NCBI GenBank assembly: GCA_964036045.1
Contig: OZ038378.1
Coordinates: 180,730,001 to 180,794,000 of the forward strand
Length of the DNA stretch: 64,000 bases
Reading direction: 5' to 3'
Source of the DNA: Eutreptiella sp. 'Long Island Sound 2002'
Lineage: Eukaryota; Protista; Euglenida
Every line of letters begins with the position of its first letter. Position 1 is the stretch's first letter. The translations under genes and the position numbers were made by a program. Positions 18,394 to 48,500 of this stretch are shown here, one piece after another. The notes beneath the pieces are model-generated. The model did not search any database. It had not been told where the DNA came from and was given only the letters and a program-made list of their open reading frames with translations.

Positions 18394-21300
18394 CTGCCAA
18401 AGCGGAGATGTGACGCGACCCCGACCCCTGGACCCGGTGTTCTATGAGAAGAGGGTTGGGCAGGGTTGGGATACAGCCGCCCCTGTGAGTCCGGCGGCCT
18501 CGGAGGTGACCCGGACCAAACCCGGCAAAAAATGAAAGTGGGATTTTTGGAATCAGCGCATCGAGGGGGTTCAGAAAAGTCATCATTTGCCATGTATTTG
18601 GTGAAACAAAATTTTGACCAATTTTCAATGCTCAAAAAAATTTTCGGCGCCAGATGTCATAATGCCTGATTAATCCTGTCCTATCAATTGAGCCCTTTTC
18701 ACGACCCCCCCGCAATTTTTGGGGGGCTCTATGGACCCCCTGTGTGACATTCCGTCTGGTTGTTGTTCCTTTACGGGGCCCTGGACAGTCACCCGTTCTT
18801 CCCTATGGACCCCCTTCCCCCCATTTAAGAACCCTACTTCCCCCGACTGCCCGGTCACCAGACATGAGGGGGGAGGGGGGTCAGGGGTCGAAGGGGGCAG
18901 AGTGGGTGCAAACGCAAATTGGTTGGGCAAGAGGTTGGAGGCCATTGCGACGGGTGCAAACCGGCTGGAGGGCCATTCGGGTCGGATAGCGGCGGGTGGC
19001 ACGGCGGGTCCTAACCTCCGATGGAGGTATCCCCCTCAAATCCCGGAAAAGGTGCGCACACCCGAGGCTGGCAACAGGCACACTGCCGGGGCCTTTATGG
19101 CGAACCCCCCCTGGCGATGACATTGCGGAGCACGCAGCCGAACAGCCTGTGGACACCCCCCCTCTACCCCTTCGCACCCTCATCTCTGTGCACCCGTTGA
19201 GCCTGACAACCAACTCGTTTCTGTCGTCGCATGGACTGGCAATGCCCGGGCACATTGTCGGCCACAACAATCCGGGGGTTGTGGCCGAACACAGGGCCGC
19301 CCATCCCTAGGCCACGAGGGTGTTGCGTGCCGCGCTTGCTCCGTCTTATCCGCAGGGCTCCTTTAAAGCCCCCCCCCCCCCCCCCGGCCCCCGCCCCCCA
19401 GTGGTGCTGAGTGCGTAGAGTAGATGGACACAGGGCCACATGCGCGGATGGATGGGCAACAGCACACCTGAAGCAGGATATTGGAGGAGTCGAGGTGGCG
19501 TGACGGCATCAGCAGCAGCGAAGTGGAGGTTGCGCAGTTGGGCATCTGCAGAGACACCGGCGCACTCTCCTCCATGGCCACATTGTCTATGTGCTCGTTG
19601 CTGTAGAACTTCCCGATGTCCGTGTGGCCGTACAGCGTGGAGGTGATCTGGAACAGGGTGCTGGGCCTGAACAGCACCTCTCCCTCCTGCGATGGGGACA
19701 GAAACAGGGTGGCAACATCCTTCCGCAGGGGGGGGGGGGGGGCTCTGGCACCCAGCAACGGGGCTGACGAAGACGGCAGCAGACGTTCCTCCCTCCCCCG
19801 CTCCCTCCCCCGCCGTCACGCCTTCAGAGCAGTCATCCGCAATCACCGGGGGACCTCAGCCCCCTCCCCCCCTCTCCCCCCCTTGCGGAGAGCAACACCA
19901 AAAGGGCAGGCGGACTTTCAATTGGAGGGCGGGGGGGGGGGGGGGGGGTGATAGAGCCCTCCGGCCGGACCCCCCCCCAAAAGGGGCTCAATTGACAGGA
20001 CCCCCAAAATCCTCCCGGGACTGACCCCCGGCCCTCGGAGGTGACCCAGACCCAAAAAACGGCAAAAAATGAAAATGGGATTTTTGGAATCAGCTCATCA
20101 AGGGGGATCACAAAAGTCATCATTTGCCACATGTTTGGCGAAAAAAACACTAGAAAACATTTGACCAGTTTTAATGCGCAAAAAAATTTTCGGCACCTTC
20201 AGAGCCAGAGTTCATAATACCTGATTAATGGTCCTGTCAATTGAGCCCTTTTCACAGACCCCCCCCCCCCAGTTTTGGGGGGCTCTATTGAGCCCCCCCC
20301 CCCCCCCCCCCCCCCCGCAGTTGAAAGCCCTACTTCCCAAATCCCAAAATTTGATGGAAACAACACCTACCATTGCTCTGACAAGGGCGTTGCTCTCGCA
20401 GGGCGGTGGGGGGGGGGGGGGACTGGCAGGTGGACTCGCACTGGCAAAGGCTCCCCACGGCTCCTTTTTGGGGGGGGGGGGTCCGTGGGGGGGACTCCCC
20501 CAGAGCGTTGCTTGAGCGGAGGTGGGAGGGGGGGCGGGGGTCCAGGGGAGGGAGGGAGGGGGTCTAGGGGGGAGGCCCCCCCCCTGCCGAAATGAACCAT
20601 ATCCACCAGGAATTGCAAAAATGCACCACATTGACCCATTCAGCATATACATTTGTCATAATGTCTGAACACAGGTAATCAAATCATCTTTTTGGGTCCA
20701 TACATTGTGCCCTCACCTAAACACGTCCAGGCAACACAAACACGAAACACAGTGGAATGCTCATTGTTATCAAATTGTTTGCTGAAGATCAATCAGAGTT
20801 CAACTCACCTGAGCTGGACTCACCAATGTCATCCTCTTCTAAACTGCAGTCTTGTCGTGCCATTATGGCTGCTTGTCTTATAAACTCGGACAGAGTTGCC
20901 CTTGGAGTGTTCAGAAAAAGGGTGGAACATGCTTTCTGTGCAACATTGTACGCCTCTTGCCTTCTATTCCCAGTCCATCTATCGTGGAAGCGAAAATAGA
21001 GGGTGGCGTTTATAACGTCGTCGCATTTTGCGTGGGGACTCGGCTGTACCGGGGTGTTAAAGAACGTACTTATGGGACGCTGGGAAATGGTGTCTGCAAC
21101 AGGGGGGAAGAAATGATACAAATGGAGTGACCAAAGAACCCTACTATAGGTGCACCGAAGGCGCGGGAGGAAAAATTTGGCCCAAACGAAAAAAGGTTCC
21201 CAGGACCCTGATTCTCAGGTGAATTAGAGCGGAGGGGGGAGGGGGGGAGGGGGTCCAGGGGAGGGAGGGAGGGAGGCCAGGGGAGAGAGCCCAGCCCCTC

Positions 21301-24300
21301 CCATGCCGGAATGAAAATTAAAGCAACGCCATGGACCCCCCCCCCTCGTGGACCCCTGGGCCCAGCAGATTACGAGCGTGCGCTGGAAGGCCCCCAACAT
21401 GAACCAACGCGCCGACGCGGCACCCCACAGCCACGGCGGAGCAGGCACGCCCCGTTCGCCAGGCCCAGGCGCCACATGGGGCGCCACATCAGGGCAGAGG
21501 GCCGCTTGCTGCAACGGGGAGGGCCCCATGCCTCAACGCACTGGGCTCGCTCCCCCCACACACACCGGCTGGTCACTCGGGAACGCCCACACTGACCGGC
21601 CGCACTCCGGGAATCCGGACGCGGGTGGGAAGCCCGCGCACACACCCCATCCGGCCCCCAAAGCCTGCAGCGCCTCCGCCGCGTCCCCAAACACGGGGCC
21701 ATTGGGGGGCCTGGCCGCACTACCGATCCAGCGCCCGGCAAATCTCTCACATGGGGCGCCTTGCGGCCAGAGGGCCCCGACGGGCAAGTGGGCTTGGGGC
21801 ACAATGCAGTGTGGGATGGCCGCAAATGGGGTCCGCGGGCATTCTTCAGCAACCCAACCCCCGAGATGCCGCTGGCCGACACCGGCGTCCACGAGAGACC
21901 GAACAGCGTACGCGGGAGAGACCGATTCTCTTAATGGAGGCCCTTTGCGTACCAAGCGCAGAAAAGCGGTCAGCGCCCTCGCCTTGTGGTGGCTGACATT
22001 TTGCCCAACTGAGGGATATTTGGGGGGGGCGGGGGGTGCCTCCCCCACACTACACCCTGAACGCCCTCTGTGCAGAGGCATGAAGCCCTTTAGCTCGCGT
22101 CAGGCGGCCCTCCGTAAGGCCTGCTCGACGCTGGATTTGGAGTGCGGCCGGGACCATCGGGGACGGTGCAGCGCTTTGGTCCACGGGGCATTCGTGGGGG
22201 GAAGGGGCGGGCACCCCACTGTGACACGGCGTCAACACTGCAGATGTCATCCGTGAGGCAGAGCCTGCACACAGGGAGTGGGTCCCTTCTGTTCGCCTGC
22301 GGATGCCACCACCGGAGGGGGGCACCGACGGAGGGGGAAAGGGCGAGGGACGGAGGAGGGACGTGAGGGGGGACGGGGGGCACACAGTCAGAGTAGGAGT
22401 AGGAGTAGTGTTGGGAATACTTCATTGGTCCCTGGCCCCCCTTTCCCATCCTCCGTCACTTCTACTCTTTACTTTGAGGTCACATGCGTTGTTTCGGGTC
22501 ATGCCTCGACGGACTGTGCGATAAGGGCATTCGGCGGTGTCGGATGAGGCGCAGCATCAGTGGACTCTCCGGTTCATACCTCCGGAAAGCGGGAACACAT
22601 GCTTATGGACCGGGCGGTGTTGCTCTGCAGGAAGAAGAGGGTGCCTTGGTCCCCTCGGGTAAACTCCTCGGCAACGTCACGGTTGGTAGAGGCACTACGG
22701 AACAAGCAGAAGGGTGCACCCGTGGACAAGGAAGAACACACAGAATAAGAAGCCATCGCCATTCGACATGTCAAGAACTGGGTGTTTCGGGGGCAGAGCA
22801 ACGCGTCAGCGCGTTACACGGGATCGAAGGCACCAACTTCCCTGTTCCCTCGTCGTGCCAGATGCGGGCGGGCTCGGATGGTGCGGCTTCCGCCCACCTT
22901 CTGAAGAATGGCGCCTGGGCGTATCAAGTTTAATGCCACAATATTTGAGTGAGAAAGGGGACCGTGGCGACCAGTTATCCGGCAAGATGGGGGGGCGGGA
23001 TCTAGAAACTGTCGAAAATGGCAAGAATTTGCCATTTTGCGACCATTCTGGGGGGTTTCGGGTGTCTGTCGTTTGCACACACTGTGCGTTCACAGCACGG
23101 CAATCGATGAACTTCCGCTCCTGCTGCTGCTCCTGCTGCTGCTGTTCCTGGCGCTTGTGGTGCTGGTGGTGCTGGTAGTCCTGCTGCTGGTGCTTCCCCG
23201 ACCGCCCTCGTCTCGCAACCGCCTAATTCCGTCCACAGCCCCTTTGTTCGATCGCCAGTAACCGGGTTTACCACCGCGCCCGGCAGCCACGTCCTGTCCC
23301 CCTGCACAGGCCTAAGCTCACGCACACAGGGGTGTCCGCGAACGCCCTGGATCCGCACTACTGAAGGAAGCTCTGGGGCAAACCTGGAGAAAGAAGGCCA
23401 GCACACAGTCTCGCCCGCTTTGTAGCTGCTCTCATCGAACCGGCAATTAATGCCGCGGTACAGTTTCCCCTCGAACTTGGGCAGGGCGAGCAGGGCAACG
23501 TCTGTGTGCCAGATCAAAGGCCGCCAGAAATCGATGCCTACGAAGCAGATCCGGAGAGGCATGCAATTCCCCTGTCCCAATACACACACAGATACACTGC
23601 TGTCTCCCACTCGCCTGCATTCCAGCAAAAGGAGTCGAACATTGCTGGCTCCGAAGTAGCCGAAGGTGAAAGAAGCGTATGCACAAACTGTTCATCGTCC
23701 GGTCGACGTTGTGCCCCGTGCTGCCACAGGGGAGCGCGTGCAGCGCTTGGAAGCAGGGCAGTCTGTCCGGGCCGCCTTTTCAGAGAGCCTTGTTCAATGA
23801 AAGGAAAAAGAAACTGGGGCCGTCCGGTACTCAGCCCCATATTCAGGACTCCCTGACCATTGACAAGCGGTTCCTCGACGGTTGAGTGACTGGAAACCTG
23901 CCCTTGTTGTTGGGCAGGCAGGCAGAACGCGCGTCATCTTCACCCTCCGTCACTTTGGGGTGGGGGGGTGGGATGGTGGGCAACAAAAGGGGCGTTGAGG
24001 GTCTGTGAAGAGTGGCGCACATTTGGTGAGCTCGGTGGCCCTACGTGGATTGGCACCTCCCGTGCACCACCGCGCGCAAACGGAATAGGGGATGCGGGCG
24101 GGACCTTGGGCGTTGTTGTTGCGCATGGCCGCGTTCATGGCCCCGTAGATCTGGTCCCCCCCATCTTCTTCCGGGAGTTCGTATGTGTACACGTACAGCG
24201 CTGCGACGTGCAGTGGGTGCAGGTTGGAGCCCTGCCGCAGCATCTCCTGCCACTTGAGCATCGTGTCCGCCGCCAAAGTGTTGATGGAGTCGCGAAGGAA

Positions 24301-25065
24301 CAAATACCCCTGCAGAAGCGTAGGGCAGGATGGTAACCCCCCCCTTAAAACCCCCCAGGGGTACTATCGATCTGGATTCTTCCAGAAGCCCAGAGCTTCT
24401 GCCAGCTCCACCTCTAGCTCCTCCTCCTCCTGCGGGGGCTGACTTTCATATGACTGCGTGTCAGATGGTTGTGAAATCTCAATCAGCCGCAGTGTTTGTT
24501 CTGTGTGTTCAGTTCCAAGGCACTGGAGGGGGGGGGGGGGGGGGGTCCCGAGGGGGGGGTTAATGGGGAGGGGGGGTTACCACCGACAAGAGCACAGCCC
24601 GTCCCCAAATTGCTCAGCACGACAGGTCACGCCGTTTGCCCAACATGTTGCGTACGTGTGCTGCCGCCTTCAGTCCCAGCTGGCGAGGCACACTTTTGAG
24701 AACAACACGACGGATGCACATGCCCCCGTATCCCCTTGTGGCAGGCGGCACACTTTGTCGCACTGGGAGACGCGCGGGGCTTTGCGGACTACGGACAGAG
24801 AGCCCCACAGCAGATGTGGCCCTTTCTGGCCCCGATGCCCCCCTGATGCCCTCAACCAGCCGCGGGTCCGGACCCCCAAGCCGTTCGACTGCGTCAGGGG
24901 TAAAGCCGCGGCACCCTCGTACACAGCCCGTGGACGGCGCGGAAGAGGATTCAAACCCGAAGTATGACGCCAATGACTGGCAACACATCACAGTTGTGCG
25001 TGACTGCATCGTAAAAGGGGGTCTCACAAATCGGGACTCAAGCCGAACGGCTCTAATGGACAGAT

Positions 25066-25120
<55 letters not shown>

Positions 25121-25128
25121 GTGGGTGT

Positions 25129-25202
<74 letters not shown>

Positions 25203-25501
25203 CGCCCAATTATTGAAACCAAACACAGCATTCGCTATCATACACCACGTCTACAGCTCTGTTTGCACTGCAGCAATGTTCTGATTCTCTGGCTCTAATG
25301 GACAGAGATTCATTGTGTGTGTGTGCAAGGCATCAATTCCAATCATGCTCAAACTGCGAGGTTCAACATTCCTACTCTCCCACCACTACTGCAAACCATG
25401 AGTCCGGTCATAGGGCTAGGAGCCATGGTCCGTTGGCGGCACTTGTACATATGGAGCCTCGTGCCCAACAGGGCAGCCCCCCTGCAGGACCGAACACATG
25501 G

Positions 25502-25552
<51 letters not shown>

Positions 25553-25706
25553 TGTGTGTGTGTGTGTGTGTGCGTGGGTTTGGGTTTGGGTTTGGGTTTG
25601 GGTTTGGGTTTGGGTTTGGGTTTGGGTTTGGGTTTGGGTTTGGGTTTGGGTTTGGGTGTGTGCGTGTGTGTGCGAGCGTGCGCGTGCGCGTGTGCGTGTG
25701 CGTGTG

Positions 25707-25752
<46 letters not shown>

Positions 25753-25825
25753 CGTGTGTGTGTGTGTGTGTGTGCGTGGGTTTGGGTTTGGGTTTGGGTT
25801 TGGGTTTGGGTTTGGGTTTGGGTTT

Positions 25826-25877
<52 letters not shown>

Positions 25878-27038
25878 ATGTGCATGTGTGTGTGTGTGTG
25901 TGTGTGTGTGCGTGCGTGTGTGTGTGTGTGTGTGCGTGTGGGTGTGTGTGGGTGTGTGTGTGTGCGTGTATGTGTGTGTGTGTGTGTGCGCGCGCGCGCG
26001 TGTGTGTGCGTGTGCGTGTGCATGTGCATGTGCATGTGCATGTGCATGTGCATGTGCATGTGCATGTGCATGTGCGTGTGTGTGTGTGTGTGTGTGTGAC
26101 TGTATATATATGCGCATACTCTCTTGCAGGCTACCACGGGGCCCTGAGAGCGCCGCCGTCGTGCCCACCGCCACACTACAGGGTATACAGAGAACACCGA
26201 GTCCAGCCACCGTGCGGTGTGCCCCAGAGGCGCGCGACTGGGCTACATCTTGGCGCCGTGGAGTCGCTCCGGCGCCCGCCGTGTCCACACACAACCACAC
26301 AATGTCTGTACAATGTCTGAGGGGCTAGGTCCACGGCTACGGACACAGTTCCACCATTGATGGGTTGCCAGGTATGGTGTTGCTGGTTCGGATAGACGGG
26401 ATACGGCAGCTTGACTCGCTCGCCTCTTCCCCCTCCCCCCGAACGCCCCAGACACCGCAGCCGGGGATGGAGCCAGAGCCCACCGCTACGGTGCTCACTG
26501 CGCTGCGGCAATGGCGCCTACCTCGTGCTGCCCAGCAGGAAAACCCCCCAACCAGGGGTGAGCGGGTCGGACAATGTTTGCCTGTATGGGTCGGTCGCAG
26601 TACATGGCGGGAGGTGCCTCCTACGACCCGGTCTACCCCTGCACATGGCAGTACTACATGTTGTTCGTTTATGTTTCGTTTCAGTTTGGCATGCGCAAGT
26701 TAGGCGCTGTGACCCTAAGCTTGCACTAATTCCTAAGCCCTAATTAAAGGCACCTGCTACATGAGCGCTTGAGGTAAACAAAACGAAAGGTGGGGCTGTA
26801 GGTTAACGGCAGCAACTTGCGCGTATGGCGTGGACGTTCTAGACACCTGTGGTTCGTGGGGTTCACCAGTATACTTTCCACCAGGCTACTTGAGCTGTGC
26901 TTAATGTCGTGTCCTGCAGACCTCTAGCTGTTGAGAAGTTTTGTTTTTTGCTTTGCCCGCATTGTTCTACCGGCCTTGCTCCCCTCATTGCGACCTTGCG
27001 TGTGTGTGTGCATGTGTGTGTGTGTGTGTGTGTGTGTG

Positions 27039-27077
<39 letters not shown>

Positions 27078-27536: not shown

Positions 27537-30500
27537 GTCAGAGCCTGTCCTAAGTCTATCTTGGACAGATGTCCCCCAGTTTCCCAATGGACCTGAATGT
27601 GTCCCGTGCCTCCGACTGCACTTCTCCCCCTGTCCCTTGCAGGCCTCGGTACCGCGCTGCTGTGCACACACGATCGTATGGAAAGCCCCCCGCACGCCAT
27701 CACATCCCCTGAGGCCGGGCCCCATCCCGGGGGTTTCTGTCCCCCCCCCCCCCAGAGCGTTGCTTGAGCAGGGGGGGGAGGGGGGGCGGGGGTCCAGGGG
27801 AGGGAGGGAGGGAGGGGGTCCAGGGGGGAGCCCCCCCCCCACCCTGCCGAAATGAACCATATCCACCAGGAATTGCAAAAATGCACCACATTGACCCATT
27901 CAGCATATACATTTGTCTTAATGTCTGAACACAGGTAATCAAATCATCTTTTTGGGTCCATACATTGTGCCCTCACCTAAACACGTCCAGGCAACACAAA
28001 CAAAAAACACAGTGGAATGCTCATTGTTATCAAATTGTTTGCCGAAGATCAATCAGAGTTGGACTCACCTGAGCTGGACTCACCAACACCAATGTCATCC
28101 TCCTCTGAACTGGAAGAGGAACCAGAAGAATCTGAGTCGGGTGACGAGTCACCACCTTTTTGACACTGTCTAGCAATTTGTCCCAGGGGACTTCCAGCAC
28201 AGTGATTGGTGTTGTGGGAGTCGCTGGCTGCACAACTACTCGTTCCCTCCCTTCGTTTTTTGGGTTTCTCTGGGACCTCAGGTGCAGGACAGTGCAGATT
28301 TGTGGGGGCTGTGAAAGACAAAAAATACGCATGTTGCAACAGAGCCTGTGTTCATGGCATCTGTGCTGCCCAGCGTGCGCACATGACAGATTGCATGAGC
28401 AAAAACTCATGCGGCAGGCAGCGCACCTCGCAGTCTTGGCGTGCCATTACGGCTGCTTGTGTTATAAACTCATGCAGAGTTGCCATTGAAGTGTTCAAAA
28501 ACAGTGTGGAACATGCTTTCTGTGCCACATTATACGCCTCTTGCCTTTTCTTCCCAGTCCATCTATCTTGGAAACGAAAATAGAGGATCGTGTTTACAAC
28601 GTCGTCGCGTTTTACGCGGGGACACGGTTGGACCGAGGTGCTGAAGAACGCACTTATGGGACGCTGGGACATGGTGTCTGCAACAGAGGGAAGAGAGGTT
28701 GCAGTGGAGTGACCAAAGAACCCTACTATAAGTGCGCCAAAGGCGCGGGAGGAAAAAATTGGCCCAAACGAAAAAACATTCCCAAAACCCTGATCCTCAG
28801 GTGAATTAGAGTGAAGGGGGGAGGGGGGGAGGGGGTCCAGGGGAGGGAGGGAGGGGGTCCAAGGGGGAGCCCCCCCCCCCCCCCTGCCAGAATGAAAATT
28901 AAAGCAACGCCCTTACCACCCCCTCCCTGGTCCCCGTGCCGGTGCGTACAAGCGTGTCCACATACACAACGCGCGGTGGAGGCATCGGCCCCTTTGGGAC
29001 ACAGACCCGTAATGCAGGAAACGGCCCTGTCATGCACGGCCCCCGAATGGGGGACAGCCAATTTGCGGATCGGCCGACGTCAACGACTGAGCGGAGCCCC
29101 CTCGCCCGGGGGATTGTGTGTCGCGGAGGACACAGGCCTATTCAGGTCCTGGATGCTAATGCCAAGGGGAAGGGAGAGGGTTTGCAGGTTAGAGCCTGCC
29201 TGCAGCCGGCACTAGCCCACCCCACCCCCGCCCCACGCGGTATAGCGCGGCGCGACGGAAGGACCGAGGCCGCCGCCTCACACGGGATCTTCGGAGGAGC
29301 GCCCATGCCCAGATTGCGGGCTGCGGGCCTCTGCGCCGTCACCGGAAGGCACAGCTGCTGCCGAGGCGCCCCCTTGTGGCTGCACCCGCAGAGTGGAGCC
29401 CCGCTCCAAGAGGCCACCACCCCGGGCCGGCTGTGCAGCCGCACCCGGCGCCGCGGGCCGTGCCGCGTGCGCCCCATGCCGCCGTGCTGTGCCCCGCACA
29501 GGCAGAGCAGGCTGGTGCGTCGTGTAGTCCGCACCTGCGCAGCGTGGGGCACCGCTGCCAGGCTGTACCCCTCGGTGTTTGTGGCGCAGAGGACACAAGT
29601 GCCCCGTCTGGGAGCCGGCCTCCGCACATCCCTCCCCGAACCCGCAAACGCCTGCCCCAACAATCCTCCTGACCAGGCACATGCCATTGGGATCGAGACA
29701 TACCGCCCGGTTCTCTGGCAAATCCATCACAAACTCCATCGTGCTCTGGCCGGGGACGTACTGCGCGTCGTAGAACTGTACCGTGAGGGTATCAGTGGGC
29801 GCCTGAAGGCCATCGACCATGCGGCTGCCCAAGCCAGTGCTGCCCGCCGGCCGCGCATTTGCCTGGTGACTGGAGGGGCACCTGCGGAGGCCGCGAGAAG
29901 GGCCCGCAGGCACACCCTTCGCGCCGAGGCCCAGGCACAGGTAATGCTGCAGGCCCGGCAGGAGCGGATCCGCGTTCTCTTGGAGCGGGTGTAAGAGTTG
30001 CAGTCGCTGTGGCTGGGAGCAAGGGGGGGCCCAGCGGGAAGGGTCCACCAGGTACGCACTGATCAGGCCCTGCAGTGGCAAGTGTGAACGGGCGGGCGCG
30101 TGGGGGGGGGGGGGGGTGCATGGGGGTGTGCTTGCAAGGCTTCTCCCAGGGAAGTATTAGAACAGGGGGCAGGGGTGGGTCTGGGACCCAAAAGTCTGTG
30201 TATGAAAAATGGACCGACAAGATTTTCCACACGGCAAATTTCGTTTTCTCCCGCTGGTCAGAAGGAGAGGCCAGGGAAGTAGTACAATGGCCGTACACCG
30301 TGGGAGGAGGGGGGGTACCCCTCCGGACCCCTGCCACCCCTCCAGCCATGCCGGCCATGCAATGCGTGGTTCCTTTATCCGACATTGATTGCTGACGTCT
30401 GACTGACAGCTAGTGACTGTGATTGTCTGACTAACTGTAGTCAGACATGATGTTCTGCTTTCTGTTTCAGACACAGTGTGTGTTTTGAGGTTTAACCAGG

Positions 30501-36500: not shown

Positions 36501-39500
36501 GATGGGATGACATCGGGTATCATGACTGCCAATTTGGAATAAACCAAATACAGTATTACATCTCTGTATGGGCATTCCTCACATATGTGCATGGAGGTAT
36601 TCTGCATTCCACACCAGATGCATTGTGCAGGAGTTGGTTGCCAGATGCCCTGTCTGCATGCCACAGTATGTAGATGTGTGTTCCATTGAATGTGCCCATT
36701 CATGAGGGCATTAGCATACAAATCATACGCTGGCTGTGGGGTACAGTACTCTACATCATGAGACTTACAATACAGCTCGGTCAGCTTGGTGTGCACATAC
36801 TTGTCCCAATTATGAAACTGCTGACCTTTACAAGAAAACGTGATCTGTGGTTCTTGTAATTCGGAAATCCATCCTATGCTTGGCACTTGTGACAGCGCCG
36901 TTTCTTTGGCACAGCTATCTACACTGTCTAGAATGATATCCAACAGTGTACCCTTTCGATGGGAGTAAATATGCACTGGAACTTGATAGTCTTGAGACAG
37001 TTGTTTACATGCCTGAAGTAAATCTCTCAAAATGGGTACAGTTTGCTCTGTATCTGACTGTAGGGCTGTAACATATGACTTAGAATCTGTATATGTATCC
37101 GATTTGGTATACCACACTCCATCTTGAGTTCCCAGCTTCTTTCTCACCAGGAGTGTTACCCAGGCCACATACATCTCTATGGCAAAAGAGTGGTCTAGGC
37201 TGATAGGACAATGTATCGGGTATACTGTGTATTCCATCGTGTCATAATCACAAATGGCAAGAGCACCTCCTACCCTGCCATCTGATAATCTGGAACCGTC
37301 TGTGACAAAGAATGGGCGTTTGGGCAAAAACTTGATGTCTGGCAAAATGGCTGGACACGGAACTGAGGGCAACAGATCCACATTCGGTAAACAGAACATC
37401 CAATCCGGGATGGGCCAGCCAGCTTTTCTAGCCGCTGGCAAATTTTTATATCCAGCCGTCATCCATTCATGCATATGCACAGCTTGCCAATCATGTGTGC
37501 ATTTATACATGTTGATTTGTTCATCGATCTGCTTGACATATGCTGGGACATGAATGCGAATGTTCATGTGATGGGTGTATTTGAGAAATCTGTCATAATC
37601 TGTGCTGTGTGAGGGACACATCTTTCCAAAGATATCTGGAACACATGGCATGCCTGGATGAAAATTCTGAGAGGCTCTCCATATACCATGAGTAACTGAT
37701 TTCCGGACCAAAGGGTTCAGATGTCCTGCCTGCCTCATGATGGTGATGACAAATGTGTGTAACATGGTGACTGTGGCTGGATATATACCAGTCCATCCAG
37801 ACTGTAATGATTGCATGAAGGAGGCTGAAGGAATTTGACCCCAATTCGCTACACTCCTAATGGCAGAAGCAGCTGCAAAATCACATAATCTCATGGTGGC
37901 ATGTGCTGGAGGCCTCACTCCTGCTATCCATCGTTGGGTACCTCCTGCACTTGCTGAGTACATAATCAAAGGGTAATTTGCTGGTAGCCTCTCATATCGA
38001 AGAGCAATACTTGCTCTTCTGCATGCTGATAACAACTTGATACAATCTTGTCGGTGGAAGATATGTGGCAAAACATGTCTTCCCAACAACCTGGCATATT
38101 CATTACCGTCTAATAACTGCAGAGTGCTCCCTCCTGCTCGAAAATCGTGGCTGTGGTATTGTACCTTTCCACCTATCATAGACGCTACTATACCCGTCAG
38201 TTTGATTACTGAAGTGTGCAAGTGTGTGTATAGCCCTGCTGTCATCTGTCTGTCTAACAATTGCTGCATATCTTTTGCGCATTCCAAAACAAAGGTTGTA
38301 TCATCCATATATGTGACTCTGAGAAATCTCCCTCCTGGACTGATAGGTATTGGAATCTGATGAGTGATAATGGCGATGCGCAATTCCAGGAGTAAACAGA
38401 AAATCAAAGCTGAAACAGGGCATCCCTGTGCAATACCTGCCCGAAATGTGGTGATGGCTAATTTCACTCCCTTTTTTCCGCCCATAAAAATTTTTGATTT
38501 GGTTGCTGCACCCATAATGATAGTGATCCATCGTTCATGAAACCCTGCGAGTCGTAAGATTTGTTCCAATGTGGGGTGCTGAACAGAACCAAAAGCATGA
38601 CGAATGTCATCTAACACAAGAAAAACTGTGAGATTTCTGTACCACCTGTCATTAACATGATCATGTATGACCCTCAATACATCATTGGCTGAAGATTTAC
38701 CCCATAAGGCAAATTGCGTTATGGTATATTACTGGTATGACTGGTATGCGTTATGGTATACCATGGGCGCCGTAGGCGCCGCCGGTGTAGGATCAGGAAC
38801 GGGCGGAGGCGCCGATGGCGGGGGTAGGACCACCGTAACAGGTTCCGCAGGCGTGGAGTACCAGTGGTCCCATGCATCGATCCTAGATGCAACGGCGGCG
38901 TAACGTGTAGCGAGCGACTCCACTGCGCTAAAGCACTTAGCCGTGTTGCCGTTGGACATCTTAAGATGATCTGCCACCCTAGCCTCCACCACCTTCGAAT
39001 CCCGGCGGTAGCCCTGAACCGCCACGTCAAATTTAGCCAATGTAGACAAGATTTGGGTCATCCGGTCCCCGTAGGACTGACTGATGCCCACGGTAGAGGC
39101 TACTGCCTGAAAAAGTTCTTGATGGGATCGCTGCAACTCTAGATTCTGAGTTCGCAGGTCCTTCACCTGTGCCATCAGAGATTGGATGCACGTTTCGTAG
39201 TGCAACACACATCGGGGACAGCCACAGGTGTGCTGTAGGTCTTCCTCCGCCCGTGTAGGAGTGGGGCCCCCAGAATGTCGAAAGGATGGACCCCCCCCTC
39301 CACGAGGAGGAGATGACCCACCACCGCCCCCCCCAGCAGCCCCCCCTGCCACGGAGGGACCAGAGGGCCCCCCCGCAGGGCGGGTGTGGGGTGCGCAGCA
39401 ACAGGTGCTGGCGCCCCCCCACTAGAGGGATGTCCCCCCCCCGAACCCCCACCACTGGATGGCCGAACCAGGTGCGGGATTCCTTGCACGTGCTCGATGT

Positions 39501-42500
39501 AAGCCGCCTGGCGGTGGCGGGGTGACGGCGGAGGGGGAACATGACCAACAGTATTCGGTCGCGGCGGTGGGGGTGGGGAATCGTCCACCACAATATACCG
39601 TATTACTGGTATGACCTGAGACTGACACAGAAGATGAGTAACGTGTTTTTTTATACTGGCCGAAAAGATTTTCCACAAAGTGTGGAAATTGAGAAGAGGT
39701 CGGGCATTTGCGATGGGACCATGAGGTAATTTATTGGGGAGAGCGTAAAAGTATCCCCAATATATACCGTCCATGTCCCCTCCTGCCAACCATGTGTTGT
39801 AAAGCTGTACCAAGTGTAATAACTGCGAATCTGACAAGAAATTCACCATTCGGGCCTCTAACAGGTTTCGAAATGGAGTGGATCGTGGAAACTTTTTGAG
39901 CACTTTGCGTAGAAAACTTACCGTAAGTGTGAGAGGGGGAAATTGAGGGGGATCCCACTGGACCCATTGCAGAATATCATTGCGGTTCATATATAAAGGG
40001 GGTGAAAGATGTCGTTGACGAAATTGATCCAATGCAACCAAACCAATCATGTCTGCATGTGCATTGTGCTGTGATACATATGTAGGCTCAAGTGATGCAT
40101 TGTATGGTTGTCGAAATATTTTTCGGTAAAGGGGTTTTCTAGGTGCTTGCGCACCTGCTGACCCCCCCAAATTGTTGAGGGAAACCCGAATCTTGTTCTC
40201 CAAATGTATCATATCCCATGCTCGCCATATCTGTGATCTATGCTTCTGTAACTGCTGTGCCTGTGTTATATGTAACCACCACTGTGGGTGCTCTGTGATG
40301 TATGCTTGCATTCTTTGCATAGCCTTTTGCACTAACATGGGGGTTGAATATGCATCACATGGCTGCCCAAATACCTGCGTGGCTGCCTGTAAAATTGCAT
40401 GTGTAAAACTTTGCACCGTGATATCCAATGTGTCTGATGCATGCTGTGTGTATTCTTTATCGAAAACTCTCTGGAAATGAGCCAACTGAGTGGCTGTAAT
40501 TTCCACAGGTATGACATACCTATTGGTAGCATGGGTGCATTCTGGAGGGGGTAATGGGGTCACATCATATATACTCAGAATTAATGGGAAGTGATCAGAA
40601 GGGAACGAACAACGATGAATCACCTGTGTTATAGGAGGTGTGGTGTGTGTGACGGAAACCATGAAGTGATCCAATGCGCCAACATGCCCCTGTGCTGATA
40701 CCCATGTGGGTCCTTGTGATTGTTTCTTTACTGGATGTATGTTGGTATCTAGAAATGCATCGAGTATGGCTTCTGTGCGGGCGGGGCTGGATATGGGACA
40801 ATCATTATCCCAACCCGGATTCTGATTGAAGTCACCACCTACTATAGTGTACCAGTAGGCAGAAATCAAGAATGGTGCAACCCAGTTCAAGGTTGCTCTT
40901 ATTTCGTGTGCCTCTGCTTTAGATTTGAGGTACAAATTGACTACCTGAAAGGGTTTGTCATTGTACAAAAAGCGAACCACAATGGCTCGATGATCTGGGG
41001 AGAAATGTTGCTCTTGCATCTGTATTCCCAACACTCTGCGTAGCAAAATTGCTACTCCCAATGAATTCCGATCTGTATGCGTGTGAAATGCCATATATAG
41101 AGGATGGAACATGAAATCTGAGGGGAGTTTTCCTATCTCCTGCAACATGACAATGTCTGGGAATTCCATCTCTTTAATCCATACATGTAACTGTTTTGTC
41201 TTGTCTCGGATACTGATCTGAACATTGAATGATATGCATCGGACCGGCGACGTCTCATGAGGATTTTTTTCTTGGGCAGTGCAGTGAGGGACTGATACAA
41301 TGTCCATTGTGTGTAACAGGGACTGTCTCAATCTCTGTGGCAATTTTCCGGGTATTTTTAAAATCCTGCGTATGATGCGTGGTTTGAATATTGCCACCAT
41401 GAGAGTACTGGCTGCACCTGTGAGCATTGTATGTGTGATGGAATACTGTGTGAACCAGTACATAGGCAATATGAGCGAGTGTCCGGTGGGTACACGAATT
41501 GCAAATTGTGTACTTGTTTTTGTGCATCCTGAGATCTGCATAGCACCTTTCAGCTGAATGTAATAAAGCACATCAGCCCATTGAGTTAACAATGGAGCTG
41601 GCTGGTGTGTGTGCTTGAAATAATGGATGTGTATCAATCCAGCAGGGACTGGCAAAAGAGACAGAAGTTCTGCAGGAACTTCTCGGAAACTTACACACCG
41701 GTTGTTCTGAAACTGAAAACCCCACTGACTGTCAATGGCATTCCCAGTCAGAGGAGACACATACAATATTACTTGCTGTATCGGAAATTCTGACGGAAAG
41801 GGAACTGAATCTGGGGGGCTTTTAAGGTTGCCAGGGGTTTGGCCATCCTTGCTGTTCAGGTGTAGATGGCCAGGCATGGTTATGTACCGGTGCTTGTTGT
41901 GGTGCCCAATGATGCTGTGCATGCTGATGGGGTTGCCAGCCACTTGTGGTGGGAAGGCGAAAATGCTGTGGATTGGTATCTTTTACCCTCCTGTCTGGTG
42001 ATGGGGACCTGGATCTAGAACGAGAGTAATGTTTCTTTCCGTTTTTCTTTCGTTTTGGAGATCGTGATTTCGATCTGGATCGGCTCCGCTTCTTCTTGTG
42101 TGAGTTCTCCTTCTTTTTTGTACTGCTCTCTCTCCGATTTTTGTGGTCATCGGATTGATCCGATTCACTTGAATCATCATTCCCTTTTTTTTGTTTCTTT
42201 TTTCCAGATGAATGGCTGGCTTCTGGCGTAAAATATGAGGCTTGATGAAATCCCCTGGGAACCCATGGGGACCAGGGTTGTTTGGTGGCTTTTTTCCAAT
42301 TGATTCGCCACCCTGAAACGACTGTCATACCTGGTGTATTGGCTTGATCTTTTCCGTCCTCTGAGACTCCTAACATACAGAAAGACCGTGTGCCTTTCAC
42401 TGAGTCATCTGTGATGGAGCACAGGTTTTTTCCGAATACTGGTCTTAATGCAGTGCCCAAAATCCGGGCAGATATATCATGCTCTGGGGGGTCCATCACT

Positions 42501-45500
42501 GCATTCCATGCCACAAGGATACATATAGGAAATTTTGCAGGGTCTGATGACCTGGATTGAGATGTCTGTGCTGCTTGCTGATTTCTGTGTTCTGCCTGCT
42601 TGACAATGGTATGACCCGTCGAGATCGGGTCTTGGGGGGTTTCGTGCTCTGCCTGTGTGAAGAAATCTTTGATAACATGATCCAATTTGGGATGTGTAGT
42701 ATGCATGTTGAGAGTGTTCCACTGCTCATGTAGATCCGTAGGTGAGAGGTTACGAATCTCTGGCATGTTCAGGCTGACCGTCATGTGGAGCTTTTTGGCA
42801 AAGCCACTGATTTTCTCTGTAGGCTGGTGATTGATCCATTTCAATAGTTTGTGCATAGGCGGTGAACCTGGAATCTGTGTTTTTACTGTAGGAACTGGTG
42901 TTTTATCTTGAGCTGACTGAGGTGTGTTGTGTGTGGGTGACTCTCCTACTGGATCAGTATCATTCAAATACTTCAGTAAGTTTACTGTAGTGGGCCTGTG
43001 CTCTGGTATGAGTGCTGTGATAATGGGAAGCAAGTCCTGCCTGATACCTGTGACTGCTAAAAAAGTTGAGACAAGAGGAACAGAAGCCATATATTTGGCA
43101 TGGAGTGGAGGGAGACACGTGAAATTTTCGGGAGAAGACTCTTTCAAGAGGTCCACCAGACTTGGGGACGGTGGGCCTTCCCACTCACTTGCTTTCTGTC
43201 TGATTCTGACCAACATGGCGAATGCATTTGCGAAGTTCTCTGTGAGCTGTGGAAGCGTTAGTTCAGCTGTTTCGGATCTGTCTCTCATTTCTTGAAGCTC
43301 TGCTTGTAGAATCTTGATAGTGCCCTGCAATTCTTCGATCTGTTTGCTTTGCAATTTTATCGTGTTCTCTGCCTGCCGATGTTGCGTCTTGATATGATCC
43401 AGGTCCGCCTTGGTTGTTTCCAATCTTTGAGCATTCATACGCTGTGTGAGATGCTCCGGAATGAGAGGTTCTTCCTCTTTCTGCGAAAAACCATCATCCA
43501 ATGCCTGCAATAGGTCTGCACTCGTTCTGCTTGTTTTCTTCATGTCCAGCAAATTGGGGCTGTTTAGCAAGTCGATATAGTTGTCCTTTGGCTTGAGCAA
43601 TGCTGCAGTAGGAGCAGTAATCCATGAAGGTTTTTCCCCAGGCCAGGCTTCTTCAAAAACCGCTTCTGTTGCCACTTCCAAGATGGATTGGCGAATGATA
43701 TCTTGAGCTTTGTTCTGGTTCATCGCTTGTACGATTCCCTTGTTTCTGAGTGCATTTTGCTTGTGCGGAGGAGCCAATTTATCACTTGCCCATGCCAACA
43801 GATGATGATAAATTTGCAGATAATCCGATCGTGTGACAGTGGCAGTGCCTGTGAATGGTACAGTGTCTGGTAATCGGAACAGTTGTTCCTGAATACACTG
43901 TAGCCCAGACTTTTGTAATTCTCCCCATATTGTCTTGAGATGTACAGGAAGAGACTGTTCCATTGGTGTCAGCACAATGTTCTTGAAGAGTGTAGTATTC
44001 ACCTTCTTGTATTCTTGTCCCTTAATCTGCAGGAGCTTGCCAAATGTATCCTTGATCTCACTGTTCTCGATCTTTCGATACGTTTGATCCCACATCTTGA
44101 CAATATTTTTAATTGATGGTAGCTGCACTTGTATGTGTGCCAAAAGAGCTGGAGAGCGGGCTAGAGCGATTGGTATGTGTTCCACTTGCTGCTTCTTCTT
44201 TTCTTGCATGACTTCAGCTGTCACAGTGAGCAGGTATCCTTGTGGGGCCAATAGTACATTTATGCTGGAGACATAACTGATCTTGCCGACTATGGTAGTC
44301 CATCTGAGAGCATCACAGAGAGCTTGTACTTGTATTCCAGGCGCGAATGCAGCTGGTAAAGCACTTTCAGCTTCCTTGTACACATGAGCAGGAGTGAGAT
44401 CAATGTACTCTGTGAGAAGTCTCTGTAACTCTGGGTCTGATGAGTGTGCAAGCAGCTGCAACAAAGAAGCTTGATAGGGGACATGTTCCATGTCTGTACA
44501 CGGGACATGTAGGAAGTGATGTACTGAGGGAAATTTGTTCACTGATGAACCTGATTGACACATGACAATATATGTGTATCATATATTGTATAGCTTGTTG
44601 AAGAGTAAGGAAAGGGAAGCACTGGCCGCATGGGGTATGTTCTGATGAACACAGAGCCACTCTGGCTATTCTATGATAGTGAAACTGACCGCACGGGTTG
44701 CACTGTGTGCCTTTCCGCTCTGGTCTGTGATACTAATAACTAATGATTGTGCATGCCAGGTTTCAGGAAACACAGCAACATTAGTTAAAAATACCCTATT
44801 TTTTCCTGTAGCCTGATTGTGTCGTTTATCCCCGGGAGGCCTGGTACATGTCTCACGTGGAGTACTACAACGGGACTCGAACTGGCGTCGCTGGTGGTTA
44901 AAGACGACGAATATAACCACTCTACTATTGGACGAGTTCAGTGCTACTAGCTGTCTGACTTCTGATCTGGCTCTAAGTCTGGTATCTCCAATCGTCTACA
45001 TTATTACTCACTGCACTGTCGGTTGCCACGTGCTTCAGCGGGAAAACGCTGGAGCTCCACTCGCGGGATCCTGATTTCGATTCCCGGCCACCACGAGCAG
45101 TTTCCGCCGTTCGTGGTGGCTCACGGACGGGTGGTGTGGCAACCTCCCGCCACCTGTGGGCGGTGGCGGGGCGCACTGCTGCAGGCAGTGGGCAGGCATT
45201 TTTTTCTCCTGATCATGACCAAAAAAGGGGGTTTGTCAAAAGAGAAGCTAAAAGAGAAGCTAAAAGAGAAGCAACATCCCAAAGTGGCTCCGGTCACTCA
45301 TGTCTGTACCAAAACGGGAGACGTCGCGGCCTTCTGTCAGTTGTGGGCGGTGGCTGGGCGCACTGCAGTCAGTGGGAGTCGAACCGACGATCTTTCTGTT
45401 GACGAGTCTATGTTGTACTACTAGGCCGCTCCGTCTCCATGCCGTAGTCACGCATACCGGTTGCACTCGGATCTTGCAGAAAAAGAAAACTAAGCTATCA

Positions 45501-48500
45501 AGTTGCACCCAGGGCTCAGTGCCGCAGAGCATCCACAGGCACCGGCGCCAGCTTTACTTTGGGGGTAGTGTACACTCCCCAGGGATCATGCACACGGGCT
45601 TGGCGGTTCCACTGTACACAATATTATCAATATCTCTAAGGGGTCTTGTGTGTTTAGAATCTGCTGGTCCCCCCTTATTGACATTGGTAATAGTGGACCC
45701 GTGCTCCCTGCTTCGTACTGCCATCTGTTGAGTGTCTTGTCGCTCCCCTTTTCCGGTCTGTTGGCGCAGTTCTGAGCACTGTCGGGCCCTCACACCACGT
45801 CAAGGTCACCGGCCCTAGGGTCTGAGTAGGGCGTGAGGGTCGACCAGGGGGGGGGGGGGGGCGGTGATACATTGCGGCGTGTAGGCCAACCGAGCGCCCG
45901 CCTCATCCTTGCAGCACTCTGTCGACCCCTGCGCTTTATGGCCGCGGAGGTGGCCACGTTGGTACCTGCACTTCCGCCGCCGGAGGGTAGTCCTGCCACA
46001 AGCCATGCCCCTCATGGTACTGCCAGGAGAAGCAGTGCGGGTACCGCGCCTGGTAGTTCGCGAGGACGTGTGCGAGGACCTCCGGGTGCCCTGAGGTCGC
46101 CGCCGCTTCCACGAGGCCCTTGGCATGCGGAATGGAGTGCAGGAGGAAGTCGTCCGGGGCCGTGAGCCTTTGGACCTGCAATGACAGCGCAAGTGGAACG
46201 GAAACGCATCGCCCGACAGCGCTGGTTGTGACGGGGAGACGGGTCCCCCGCAGGCTTTGTTTATAAGAGGGGGGGGGGGTCCTTTGGCTCTGAGATCCAC
46301 CCATCCAAAAAAAAAATCTTGACCCAAAATTTGGCTGAGGGAAAATCAAGTTTGAATAAGCGGTCGTTTGTAGGACCCACCCAGACCCCCCACCCCTTAC
46401 GCATTAATTCCTTATAAACAAAACCTGGTGCCCCGGGTTGCAGGTTCGCACGCCGGGCGGACCGGAGCAGACACGCCACAGGCGCAGTTCTCTTTCAAAC
46501 CCCCCCAAAAGACCATGAACCCTCCGCAAGGCCCAACAAATACGCAGCATGTGCACCGGACAAGTGCAACGCGTAGCGACGGCACAAGAGCGTCCTGAAG
46601 CAGCGATAACCCGAAAAAGTAAAAGCGACGCATTTGCACATCCGGACCACCAGCAGCAGAATGCAGCTGCAGCGGGAACGCCAACGGCACCGCAAACACC
46701 GGCATTGACCAGAGAGTCTGGGCAGGAACCTGGGCTCTGAGGACGGGGGCGATGGTACGCACGAATACAACCGCAGATACCCGCATCTAGAGCGGTCTGA
46801 GACCCGGGAAAATCCAACGAGAAAATTGACGGGGCTGAATCTTGAGGGGGCAGCACCAGCCCACGACTGCGTTCATTTCACCGCCAACTGCATCAGCTGC
46901 TTCCCTACTCTGCCGGATCATCGCCGTCGGCTCCCTGGCAATGTGTCCCTGGACCACCGGCCTCCGTCCGCCGAGGCTGGGCGCCCTCGCTAAACCATTA
47001 TCCTGCCGCGTCAGGCTGTCCTTCGCATGGCAGTCAGAAAATTCCTTCCACACAGCCCTGACGCAGAGCTGTCAACGGACGGGGCCCGCACACCTTCTTC
47101 CGAGTGTTGGCGCCGGGGTCCGATTTCTTGGCGGTGGACGTCTTCGTGGCGAAGGCTCCGATGGGGGTCGGTGCGACGACCGCGTCGTGCGCCGAGTCCT
47201 CGCTGTCGTCCTCCATGTGCAGCGCAAAGCTGACCTTCGGGCAGTGGGCCGTAGCTTGGCACTTGGAGCCCACCGGAGACCCATACGGCGATCTGGCGCG
47301 GTCCAAGTCGCACTCGCTGGACACCGAAGCCGGTGACTTCTTCCGCAGATGCGCCTTCAGCCACTTGTGCAGCAACTGGGGGAGTGAGAGAGGCACAGAG
47401 CCAATGCTGTCTAGAGCACGCACACCTTCAGCAGGCGACACCAAGATCCATGAAGGAGCCAGAACATTGGCAATATTATGCGAAGAAAATTGATGCAATG
47501 TCGGATATTCGGAAACATAACCGATGACACTGAAAAATGGGAACAAAAACGAAAGGATGATGACTTTTTTTTTTGCACTGGCCTGCGGCTGTGAGCCCCC
47601 CAGAGCCCAACAGAACCACCCACCGTCACGCACCGCCACGCACAGTCACGCACCGCCACACACAGTCACAGACCGCCACACACAGTCACGCACCGCCACG
47701 CACAGTCACGCACCGCCACGCACAGCCAGGCCGCATCTCGGCTCAGAATCCCGTTCCGAGGGCACCCAGTCCACCGGCAAAGCCCCTATCTTTCGTCTGC
47801 CCCGCACAGAATGACCCAAACAGACACACAGAACCCCCAAAAGGCCATCACTTGGCCCAGGGGAGCGAGCGCTGTGGCCACCAGCAGCGCCCGACAACGC
47901 ACGGGTGCCCCTCTGGTCGCCCAGAAGGGCTCCAACTCCTCCTCCCCTGTCCCTCTGCGGGGCTGTGGGTGGCCCTGTGTGGCTCTGTGTAGCGGTTTCC
48001 TTTGCGGCGATGTGCCAATGCTGCAGAAGCGTCCACTCTACCTCCTCAGGTTGGGGTGCCAGTGGCACATGGTTGTGGCCATGGCATGTCATCTCCCAGC
48101 GGTTGCAGCCCTGTGTCGGGGACGCGCACTATCGGTTGACTATTTGATCCACACCTTGCCGCTAGAGAGTTGTTGCTAGAAGATGCTCCAGATCCATCCA
48201 AAGTCATGTGTCTCAGAGCGTTCTGTGTCCCTTTACAGCGTCATGTCTACCCTGAGCCCTTTGTGAAGGTCCCTGTCCAGGCCTATCAACATGAGAAACG
48301 CGAGCACCAGGCACCAGTGGGGCGGCCCATTACCCCCCACCCCCCGTTGAGCGAGCATGGCCGAAATTCCAAGAAATACGGTCGCCTGAGGCCATAATGC
48401 TTCGACAATGCCGTGGTTATCACAGCCTGAGCATACGGGAGGGGGGGGCAACCCTGCACGGCACAGAGAGCACCACATCACTGCCTCTGCCTCCCCTGCC

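What the first reader, a model, noticed from the sequence alone, without database searches (positions are those of the whole stretch)
19468..46175. Tandem WWE reader domains fused to an R-S-E (not PARP-type) transferase
Seen: two WWE-like units (SWQYHEGHGLWQDYPPAAEVQIQNAV...LDL and FRYRNRSGQWDVTSDPQHLPEIQEAV...DLQ) lie before the ART. Established: WWE domains usually accompany H-Y-E PARPs and E3 ligases (Deltex, RNF146) and can bind iso-ADP-ribose. Inference: this is a reader-writer coupling across ART clades, possibly feedback or activation by poly(ADP-ribose).
Basis: partly seen in the sequence, partly recalled or inferred. Interest (0 to 1): 0.75.

Follow-up and report, generated by a model that had tools for sequence, protein, structure and literature searches.

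The report
Euglena receptor-like WWE plus ART gene
This is the tail of a very large, intron-rich Euglena gene whose protein ends in one real WWE domain (not two) followed by an intact arginine-type ADP-ribosyltransferase; the pairing is real and unstudied, but it recurs about 60 times in this genome and also occurs in rotifers.

Summary
Partly confirmed. The quoted peptides lie on the minus strand in nine GT-AG exons (46175-18169) with consistent phases and no stops. These exons are only the C-terminal part of a gene that runs off the window's high end. The genome is Euglena, not human.

- **ART:** a genuine R-S-E transferase. Arg, S-x-S and E-x-E are intact, and the fold matches Vis, Tre1, HopU1 and ART2.2.
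- **First WWE unit:** a genuine WWE domain. Profile hits in the PDB are almost all WWE domains. On the closest paralog the AlphaFold model has pLDDT 93 and aligns to DTX1 and HUWE1 WWE at Z 9.8, rmsd 1.5 Å.
- **Second "WWE" unit:** not a WWE. hhalign gives 1.2% probability and no structural match. It is a family-specific extension that packs against the single WWE.
- **How common:** the WWE-extension-linker-ART cassette follows 59 of the 61 best module matches in this genome, mostly at the end of giant receptor-like open frames. One member matches a transcript-derived protein. An atlas lead shows rotifer clusters carrying both WWE and ART.
- **Ligand binding:** iso-ADP-ribose contact residues are only partly conserved, so poly(ADP-ribose) binding is open.

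Other windows of this genome were already flagged for the same family. The verdict is a new variant of a known kind, of moderate interest.

The parts
47097..64000 (-). Upstream exons of the same gene. The gene runs off the window's high end. They encode unassigned ectodomain sequence (the paralog has a PAN domain that maps here, but Pfam found no PAN in the window's own exons), a Thr/Ser/Pro-rich stalk, three strongly hydrophobic segments, a CxxC...CxxC zinc-finger-like piece, an ankyrin-like piece and a divergent linker exon at 47375-47097.
   Evidence: tblastn of the intronless paralog (residues 1827-2939) against the window; hydropathy of the paralog; Pfam PAN_1 on the paralog. Exon ends here are approximate (alignment bounds).
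45966..46175 (-). Exon with two capping helices and the N-terminal half of the WWE domain. The two invariant Trp codons are at 46025-46023 and 45998-45996.
   Evidence: AG/GT sites and phase 0; profile A3 match E 4e-19 at this place; 66% identity to the paralog.
33867..45965 (-). 12.1-kb intron that splits the WWE domain inside its helix. It holds same-strand LINE-like ORFs of 913, 922 and 995 aa at 35690-44563.
   Evidence: Donor GT at 45965 and acceptor AG before 33866; ORF list.
33724..33866 (-). Exon with the C-terminal half of the WWE domain (LDL strand, conserved Arg) and the first residues of the extension.
   Evidence: 55% identity to the paralog; splice sites.
31744..31867 (-). It is a family-specific extension of the WWE module, not a WWE.
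   Evidence: hhalign of extension profile A6 against WWE profile A5: probability 1.2%; no WWE hit in the PDB; structural alignments to WWE domains centre on model residues 33-97.
29704..30069 (-). Exon with the end of the extension (VDPSRWAPPC), a variable low-complexity linker and the start of the ART N-terminal helical region.
24105..24309 (-). Exon with the ART N-terminal helices.
   Evidence: 77% identity to the paralog; family search.
23384..23537 (-). ART exon with the catalytic Arg (LYRG; Arg codon 23457-23455) and the first Ser of the FSSAS motif.
22580..22694 (-). ART exon that completes S-x-S. One Ser codon is split over the intron (23385-23384 plus 22694). The exon ends in ...FPE.
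   Evidence: Pfam ART E 0.0026 on this exon's reading frame alone.
19468..19686 (-). ART exon that begins with E-G-E (19686-19678), the E-x-E catalytic motif, and carries the last ART strands.
   Evidence: 77% identity to the paralog; invariant Glu in the family alignment.
18169..18393 (-). Last coding exon (C-terminal tail and stop codon). It lies outside the finding's range.

Best explanation
**Shown.** The region holds the C-terminal exons of one very large, intron-rich Euglena gene. Its protein ends in a conserved cassette of about 500 residues:
- two capping helices and a single WWE domain;
- a family-specific extension of about 65 residues (three strands and two helices) that packs on the WWE;
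- a variable, probably disordered linker;
- an R-S-ExE mono-ADP-ribosyltransferase domain with all catalytic residues intact.

The same cassette closes about 60 other, mostly intronless, giant open frames in this genome. One member matches a transcript-derived protein.

**Inferred.**
- The protein is a multi-pass membrane receptor. A large ectodomain lies outside the cell and the zinc-finger, ankyrin-like, WWE and ART parts lie in the cytosol.
- The ART modifies arginine on cytosolic targets.
- The WWE module tethers the enzyme, through the flexible linker, either to an ADP-ribose-type nucleotide ligand or ADP-ribosylated protein, or to a protein partner. This would localise or reinforce the modification.
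For: **Gene model**
- Nine AG/GT exons with consistent phases and no stops.
- Collinear with a 3524-codon intronless paralog at 50-86% identity.

**ART**
- Pfam ART scores 50 bits on the paralog.
- Foldseek E 7e-10 to 1e-7 to Vis, Tre1, HopU1, ExoS and ART2.2.
- R391, S415, S417 and E456 are invariant and E454 nearly so in 18 members. The window has LYRG, S-A-S and E-G-E.

**WWE**
- Family profiles hit WWE chains almost exclusively: DTX1 2.9e-6, TRIP12 5.9e-6, Deltex 1.8e-6 to 6.2e-6, then HUWE1 and RNF146. The few non-WWE chains score E 0.1 or worse.
- The module model has pLDDT 93.2 and pTM 0.85.
- VIA Z 9.8, rmsd 1.5 Å over 65 residues to DTX1. The top 19 rows are all WWE; the next best row has Z 2.7.
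- 41 of 53 members match Pfam WWE.

**Cassette and expression**
- 59 of the 61 best module matches have an ART match just downstream on the same strand (my comparison).
- The protein EG_transcript_49 carries the module (hhalign E 1e-34) and ART.

**Membrane layout**
- Three strongly hydrophobic segments and a signal-peptide-like start in the paralog.
Against: - There is no transcript evidence for this particular copy, and its N-terminal part lies outside the window.
- The topology rests on a crude hydropathy scan. A fourth, weaker hydrophobic segment would put the cassette outside the cell.
- The WWE pocket is only partly conserved. The Q153 equivalent is His 22, Gln 10, Glu 9; the R110 equivalent is Gly; the Y144 equivalent is not aromatic.
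- Structure and Pfam tests were run on the paralog and the family, not on the window's own joined protein.
- No enzymatic or binding data exist.
Confidence: 0.65

Rival explanations
1. One reading: two tandem WWE readers (as in Deltex or ZAP) bind poly(ADP-ribose) or iso-ADP-ribose and activate the ART.
For: The second unit starts with a WWE-like hairpin. hhalign aligns 11 columns, F-R-Y-R..G-Q-W to W-Q..G-L-W. The genome has PARP-type enzymes, so poly(ADP-ribose) may exist: 47 PF00644 matches, best E 6e-61.
Against: - hhalign probability is 1.2% for unit 2 against unit 1.
- The unit-2 profile hits no WWE chain.
- In a pLDDT-93 model, unit 2 has three strands and two helices. Tandem-WWE structures align only to model residues 33-97 (DTX1) or 29-97 (Deltex).
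- The window's E-I-Q-E-A-V stretch is not conserved in paralogs.
- Key iso-ADP-ribose contacts are missing.
Confidence: 0.07
2. The WWE module is a protein-protein or intramolecular scaffold with no nucleotide ligand, as Drosophila Deltex WWE binds Notch ankyrin repeats. It holds the ART next to the receptor's ankyrin-like or zinc-finger region or next to a substrate.
For: Three of the six RNF146 contact positions are not conserved. The eponymous Glu is replaced, and a family-specific Gln (52 of 53) sits in the helix. The WWE is capped by two helices and an extension in one compact domain with pTM 0.85.
Against: The W114 equivalent is invariant (53 of 53). The R163 equivalent is kept in 50 of 53. 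The Y107 equivalent is Tyr, His, Phe or Trp in 43 of 53. WWE domains that diverge in these residues still bind ADP, ATP or ADP-ribose in solved structures listed (DTX1, TRIP12, HUWE1, ZAP).
Confidence: 0.25
3. This copy is a decaying or unexpressed family member, and the apparent gene is not functional.
For: It is unusually intron-rich for the family and has a LINE in a 12-kb intron inside the WWE domain. There is no transcript for this copy.
Against: All examined exons are open with canonical splice sites and correct phases. All catalytic residues are kept. Coverage of the paralog is collinear from residue 1827 to the end.
Confidence: 0.1

Closest known systems
Vertebrate ecto-ARTs (ARTC; ART1, ART2.2; Pfam PF01129)
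   Same: Same Pfam family (50 bits on the paralog). Same R / S-x-S / E-x-E motifs. Fold match to ART2.2 at E 1e-7.
   Different: Vertebrate enzymes are small, GPI-anchored or secreted ecto-enzymes without a WWE domain. Here the domain ends a protein of about 3500 residues, probably on the cytosolic side, behind a WWE module.
Bacterial R-S-E toxins and effectors (Vis, Tre1, HopU1, XopAI, ExoS/T, C3)
   Same: They are the best structural matches for the ART domain.
   Different: Those are secreted or injected toxins. This is an endogenous protist gene fused to receptor-like and reader domains.
WWE-containing PARPs (PARP7, 11, 12, 13/ZAP, 14)
   Same: A WWE domain lies N-terminal to an ADP-ribosyltransferase fold in one polypeptide.
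   Different: Their catalytic domain is H-Y-[EDQ] diphtheria-toxin-like (PF00644). Here it is R-S-E cholera-toxin-like (PF01129). Canonical WWE-PARP genes also exist in this genome.
RNF146 and Deltex/DTX WWE-E3 ligases
   Same: The WWE fold is closest to DTX1, HUWE1, TRIP12 and RNF146 (Z 8.8-9.8). In RNF146, iso-ADP-ribose binding switches on the neighbouring enzyme (my knowledge of Wang et al. 2012, cited in PMC4245714).
   Different: The output domain here is an ART, not a RING or HECT. Several RNF146 contact residues are not kept. A long flexible linker separates reader and writer.
Rotifer WWE plus ART proteins (ESM Atlas clusters named 'WWE domain-containing protein' and 'NAD(P)(+)--arginine ADP-ribosyltransferase')
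   Same: Same two Pfam families in one protein. WWE is in 94-96% and ART in 86-90% of members. The three listed clusters hold 217, 57 and 101 members, and 8 of the 30 nearest clusters share this set.
   Different: They are short (320-440 aa) and apparently lack the receptor part. The relation rests on language-model features only, with no alignment made, so common origin or independent fusion is unknown.

Membership tests
R-S-E (cholera-toxin-like, ARTC) ADP-ribosyltransferases | ART fold | tested here: met
   AlphaFold model of the paralog cassette (ART part pLDDT 70-90). Foldseek E 7e-10 to Vis and 1e-7 to ART2.2. Tested on the paralog, which is 62-86% identical to the window's ART exons.
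R-S-E (cholera-toxin-like, ARTC) ADP-ribosyltransferases | Catalytic Arg, S-x-S and [Q/E]-x-E motifs | tested here: met
   The window has LYRG, S-A-S and E-G-E in exons 23537-23384, 22694-22580 and 19686-19468. These residues are invariant or nearly so in 18 family members.
R-S-E (cholera-toxin-like, ARTC) ADP-ribosyltransferases | Pfam PF01129 above the curated cut-off | tested here: met
   The paralog scores 50.1 bits against a cut-off of 22.3. In the window only single exons could be scanned: 17.6 bits, E 0.0026.
R-S-E (cholera-toxin-like, ARTC) ADP-ribosyltransferases | NAD-dependent transfer of ADP-ribose to arginine | not testable with these tools
   Needs an enzyme assay.
WWE domain (PF02825) | Sequence-profile membership | tested here: met
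   The paralog's unit scanned alone scores 25.8 bits against a cut-off of 21.1. 41 of 53 members match at E <= 0.01. Family profiles hit WWE chains of the PDB almost exclusively. In whole proteins the score is 17-19 bits, below the cut-off.
WWE domain (PF02825) | WWE fold (half-barrel of strands with one helix) | tested here: met
   Model pLDDT 93. Z 9.8, rmsd 1.5 Å over 65 residues to DTX1, and Z 9.8 to HUWE1. The top 19 rows are all WWE.
WWE domain (PF02825) | Conserved Trp, Trp, Glu | tested here: inconclusive
   Both Trp are invariant in 53 of 53 members. The Glu position is Ala, Arg or Cys. A Gln four residues earlier is kept in 52 of 53.
WWE domain (PF02825) | iso-ADP-ribose contact residues of RNF146 (Y107, R110, W114, Y144, Q153, R163) | tested here: inconclusive
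   W114 equivalent 53/53. R163 equivalent 50/53. Y107 equivalent Tyr/His/Phe/Trp in 43/53. Q153 equivalent His 22, Gln 10, Glu 9. R110 equivalent Gly 41. Y144 equivalent not aromatic. RNF146 residue numbers are from my memory of the 2012 structure paper.
Tandem WWE (Deltex, DTX1, ZAP type) | A second WWE domain directly after the first | tested here: not met
   hhalign of unit 2 against unit 1 gives probability 1.2%. The unit-2 profile hits no WWE chain. Tandem-WWE structures align only to model residues 33-97 (DTX1) or 29-97 (Deltex).

The most novel reading that the evidence does not exclude
Euglena has a large class of transmembrane receptors whose cytosolic output is arginine ADP-ribosylation. 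The built-in WWE module reads ADP-ribose-type marks, so the signal is self-reinforcing or gated. This would be a receptor-ART signalling mode with no described counterpart.
Probability: 0.2. Interest if true: 0.75.

Novelty: new variant of a known kind. Interest (0 to 1): 0.5.

Why it matters
WWE domains are treated in the literature as partners of PARP-type enzymes and ubiquitin ligases. Here one is hard-wired to the other great ART clade, in a cassette that Euglena has attached to dozens of giant receptor-like proteins. If the module binds an ADP-ribose-type ligand, reader-writer coupling arose independently in cholera-toxin-like ARTs. That would also give a tractable protist system for receptor-driven mono-ADP-ribosylation. 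In whole proteins the WWE scores below Pfam's cut-off, and public precomputed annotation lists only ART. The architecture is therefore hidden from routine domain searches.

Tried and rejected
- **Pfam on single window exons:** nothing for WWE, because the domain is split by an intron.
- **Second WWE:** rejected.
- **Atlas search with the WWE module alone:** no usable hit.
- **Word-based protein searches:** they returned only proteins of the same species' ENA assembly, one transcript-derived paralog, and one WWE-less ART-TPR protein. No rotifer sequences came back, so the rotifer lead could not be aligned.
- **Literature searches:** no description of WWE plus ARTC or of a Euglena ART family. 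The Aravind 2015 ART review is not held.
- **Spliced-leader copy upstream of the intronless paralog:** none in the fetched DNA, so no support for a retrocopy origin.
- **Search of the genome with EG_transcript_49:** it failed three times for technical reasons and I stopped.
Full report
**Source.** The window is G000:C1:180730001-180794000 of a 2.28-Gb assembly whose chromosome 1 is 201 Mb long. It is not human. Family members match proteins named EG_transcript_* in EukProt. Earlier notes of the scan also call this genome a euglenid. I take it as Euglena gracilis or a very close relative. A direct test failed for technical reasons.

**Gene model.**
- From 46175 down to 18169 there are nine exons: 46175-45966, 33866-33724, 31867-31744, 30069-29704, 24309-24105, 23537-23384, 22694-22580, 19686-19468 and 18393-18169.
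- Every exon has an AG acceptor and every internal exon a GT donor. The codon phases fit from exon to exon and there is no in-frame stop.
- The finding's limits (19468 and 46175) are exon ends, not gene ends. A last coding exon with the stop codon follows at 18393-18169.
- Upstream exons continue to the window's edge at 63999, including a divergent linker exon at 47375-47097.
- I did not build, search or fold the joined coding sequence.

**A proxy for the joined protein.** The closest relative in the genome is a single uninterrupted open frame of 3524 codons on chromosome 11 (loci L009 and L010). It is collinear with the window's exons from its residue 1827 to its end, at 50-86% identity per exon. 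The window copy has at least 17 introns where this paralog has none. I used the paralog and other intronless members for tests that need a contiguous protein.

**The transferase.**
- Pfam ART (PF01129) scores 50 bits on the paralog.
- An AlphaFold model of the cassette gives the ART part pLDDT 70-90. Foldseek matches it to Vis toxin, Tre1, HopU1, XopAI, ExoS/T, C3 and rat ART2.2, at E 7e-10 to about 1e-6.
- In 18 members the Arg, two Ser and one Glu of R / S-x-S / E-x-E are invariant, and the first Glu nearly so.
- The window has LYRG, S-A-S (one Ser codon split by an intron) and E-G-E.
- The R-S-E, not PARP-type, call is correct, and the enzyme looks active.

**The first WWE unit is real.**
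- Profiles of the region from 15 and 53 family members hit WWE chains of the PDB almost exclusively. The best are DTX1 at 2.9e-6, TRIP12 at 5.9e-6 and Deltex at 1.8e-6 to 6.2e-6, followed by HUWE1 and RNF146. The few non-WWE chains score E 0.1 or worse.
- With 53 sequences the 161-residue module folds at pLDDT 93.2 and pTM 0.85.
- Foldseek's top 20 hits are all WWE domains.
- VIA-align gives Z 9.8, rmsd 1.5 Å over 65 residues to DTX1, Z 9.8 to HUWE1, 9.3 to TRIP12 and 8.8 to RNF146. The best unrelated row has Z 2.7.
- Scanned alone, 41 of 53 units match Pfam WWE.
- In the window, a 12.1-kb intron that carries a LINE cuts this domain inside its helix.

**The second unit is not a WWE.**
- Its profile compared with the first unit's profile gives hhalign probability 1.2%. 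Only the opening hairpin aligns, over 11 columns.
- Its profile finds no WWE chain in the PDB.
- In the confident model it forms three strands and two helices that pack against the WWE in one globule.
- Tandem-WWE structures align only to model residues 33-97 (DTX1) or 29-97 (Deltex).
- The window's E-I-Q-E-A-V stretch, which suggested a WWE helix, is not conserved in paralogs.

**Family.**
- The module profile has 176 matches in the genome, about 60 of them full length.
- I compared by hand. 59 of the 61 best matches have an ART match downstream on the same strand, usually 0.5-1 kb away and in the same open frame. These frames reach 7554 codons.
- Module and ART are joined by a variable stretch of about 90 residues with pLDDT below 50.
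- The N-terminal parts differ between members. Precomputed Pfam lists show RCC1 repeats, EGF, MAM and cadherin-like domains; this gene's paralog has PAN.
- EG_transcript_49 (2673 aa) carries the whole module (hhalign E 1e-34) and ART, so the family is expressed.
- The paralog has a signal-peptide-like start, about 2200 residues of presumed ectodomain, three strong hydrophobic segments and then a CxxC...CxxC piece. From this I infer a receptor-like protein with a cytosolic cassette. That topology is an inference from a crude scan.

**Does the WWE read ADP-ribose?** I mapped the RNF146 contact residues through the HMMER alignment onto 53 members.
- The W114 equivalent is invariant.
- The R163 equivalent is kept in 50.
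- The Y107 equivalent is Tyr, His, Phe or Trp in 43. The window has Tyr.
- The Q153 equivalent is His in 22, Gln in 10 and Glu in 9. The window has His.
- The R110 equivalent is Gly, and the Y144 equivalent is not aromatic in the family. The window has Trp there.

The genome has PARP-type enzymes and ordinary WWE-PARP genes, so ADP-ribose polymers may exist. Binding is therefore possible but unproven. A protein-scaffold role is a serious rival. The long flexible linker argues for tethering rather than rigid allosteric control.

**Comparison and novelty.**
- I found no paper that describes WWE joined to an R-S-E ART, or a Euglena ART family. One key review is not held.
- The architecture is not unique. 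The ESM Atlas holds eukaryotic, mostly rotifer, clusters in which 94-96% of members carry WWE and 86-90% carry ART. The three listed clusters have 217, 57 and 101 members, and 8 of the 30 nearest clusters share this set. This is a feature-based lead without alignment.
- Public precomputed annotation of the Euglena proteins lists only ART, because the WWE scores 17-19 bits in whole proteins, below the cut-off.
- Other windows of this genome were already noted for the same family (s1-222726, s1-228246).
- I rate it a new variant of a known kind. The cross-clade reader-writer cassette is real, unstudied and highly amplified. The tandem-WWE and poly(ADP-ribose) claims do not hold as stated.

Noticed in passing
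window 35690-44563, minus strand: Three long same-strand ORFs (913, 922 and 995 aa) of a LINE-like element lie inside the 12.1-kb intron that splits the WWE domain.
   Followed up: no
G000:C11:55180816-55191387 (L009 and L010) compared with window 18169-64000: The closest paralog is one uninterrupted frame of 3524 codons, while the window copy has at least 17 GT-AG introns. This means either massive intron gain or loss, or retroposition. No spliced-leader copy was found in the DNA fetched upstream of the paralog.
   Followed up: partly
whole genome G000 (for example C1:29492-29515): The 24-base Euglena spliced-leader sequence occurs 5,458 times, dispersed on both strands of the chromosomes. 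That number could reflect scattered leader-RNA genes, retroposed copies, or both.
   Followed up: no
window 28355-28912 and 20792-21369, minus strand: Two copies of a repeat sit in two different introns of the gene. Both carry a similar open frame (...RFQDRWTGKKRQEAYNVAQKACSTLFLNT... and its variant) preceded by a Pro/Gly-rich stretch. It is probably a dispersed element.
   Followed up: no
window 24900-27600: Long (CA)n/(TG)n-type microsatellite tracts inside an intron, with strong GC and AT skew. They produce long spurious His-Thr open frames on both strands.
   Followed up: no
G000:C2:6077500-6079877, C19:31346447-31347739, C14:42940765-42941820: Canonical WWE (single or double) followed by a PARP catalytic domain is also present in this genome. 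Euglena therefore couples WWE to both ART clades.
   Followed up: partly
G000:C20:17797067-19079090: About 20 near-identical partial matches to the first 51 positions of the module profile lie 26-200 kb apart (most about 60 kb), each in a frame of about 311 aa. This is a tandemly amplified segment that carries a fragment or short relative of the family.
   Followed up: no
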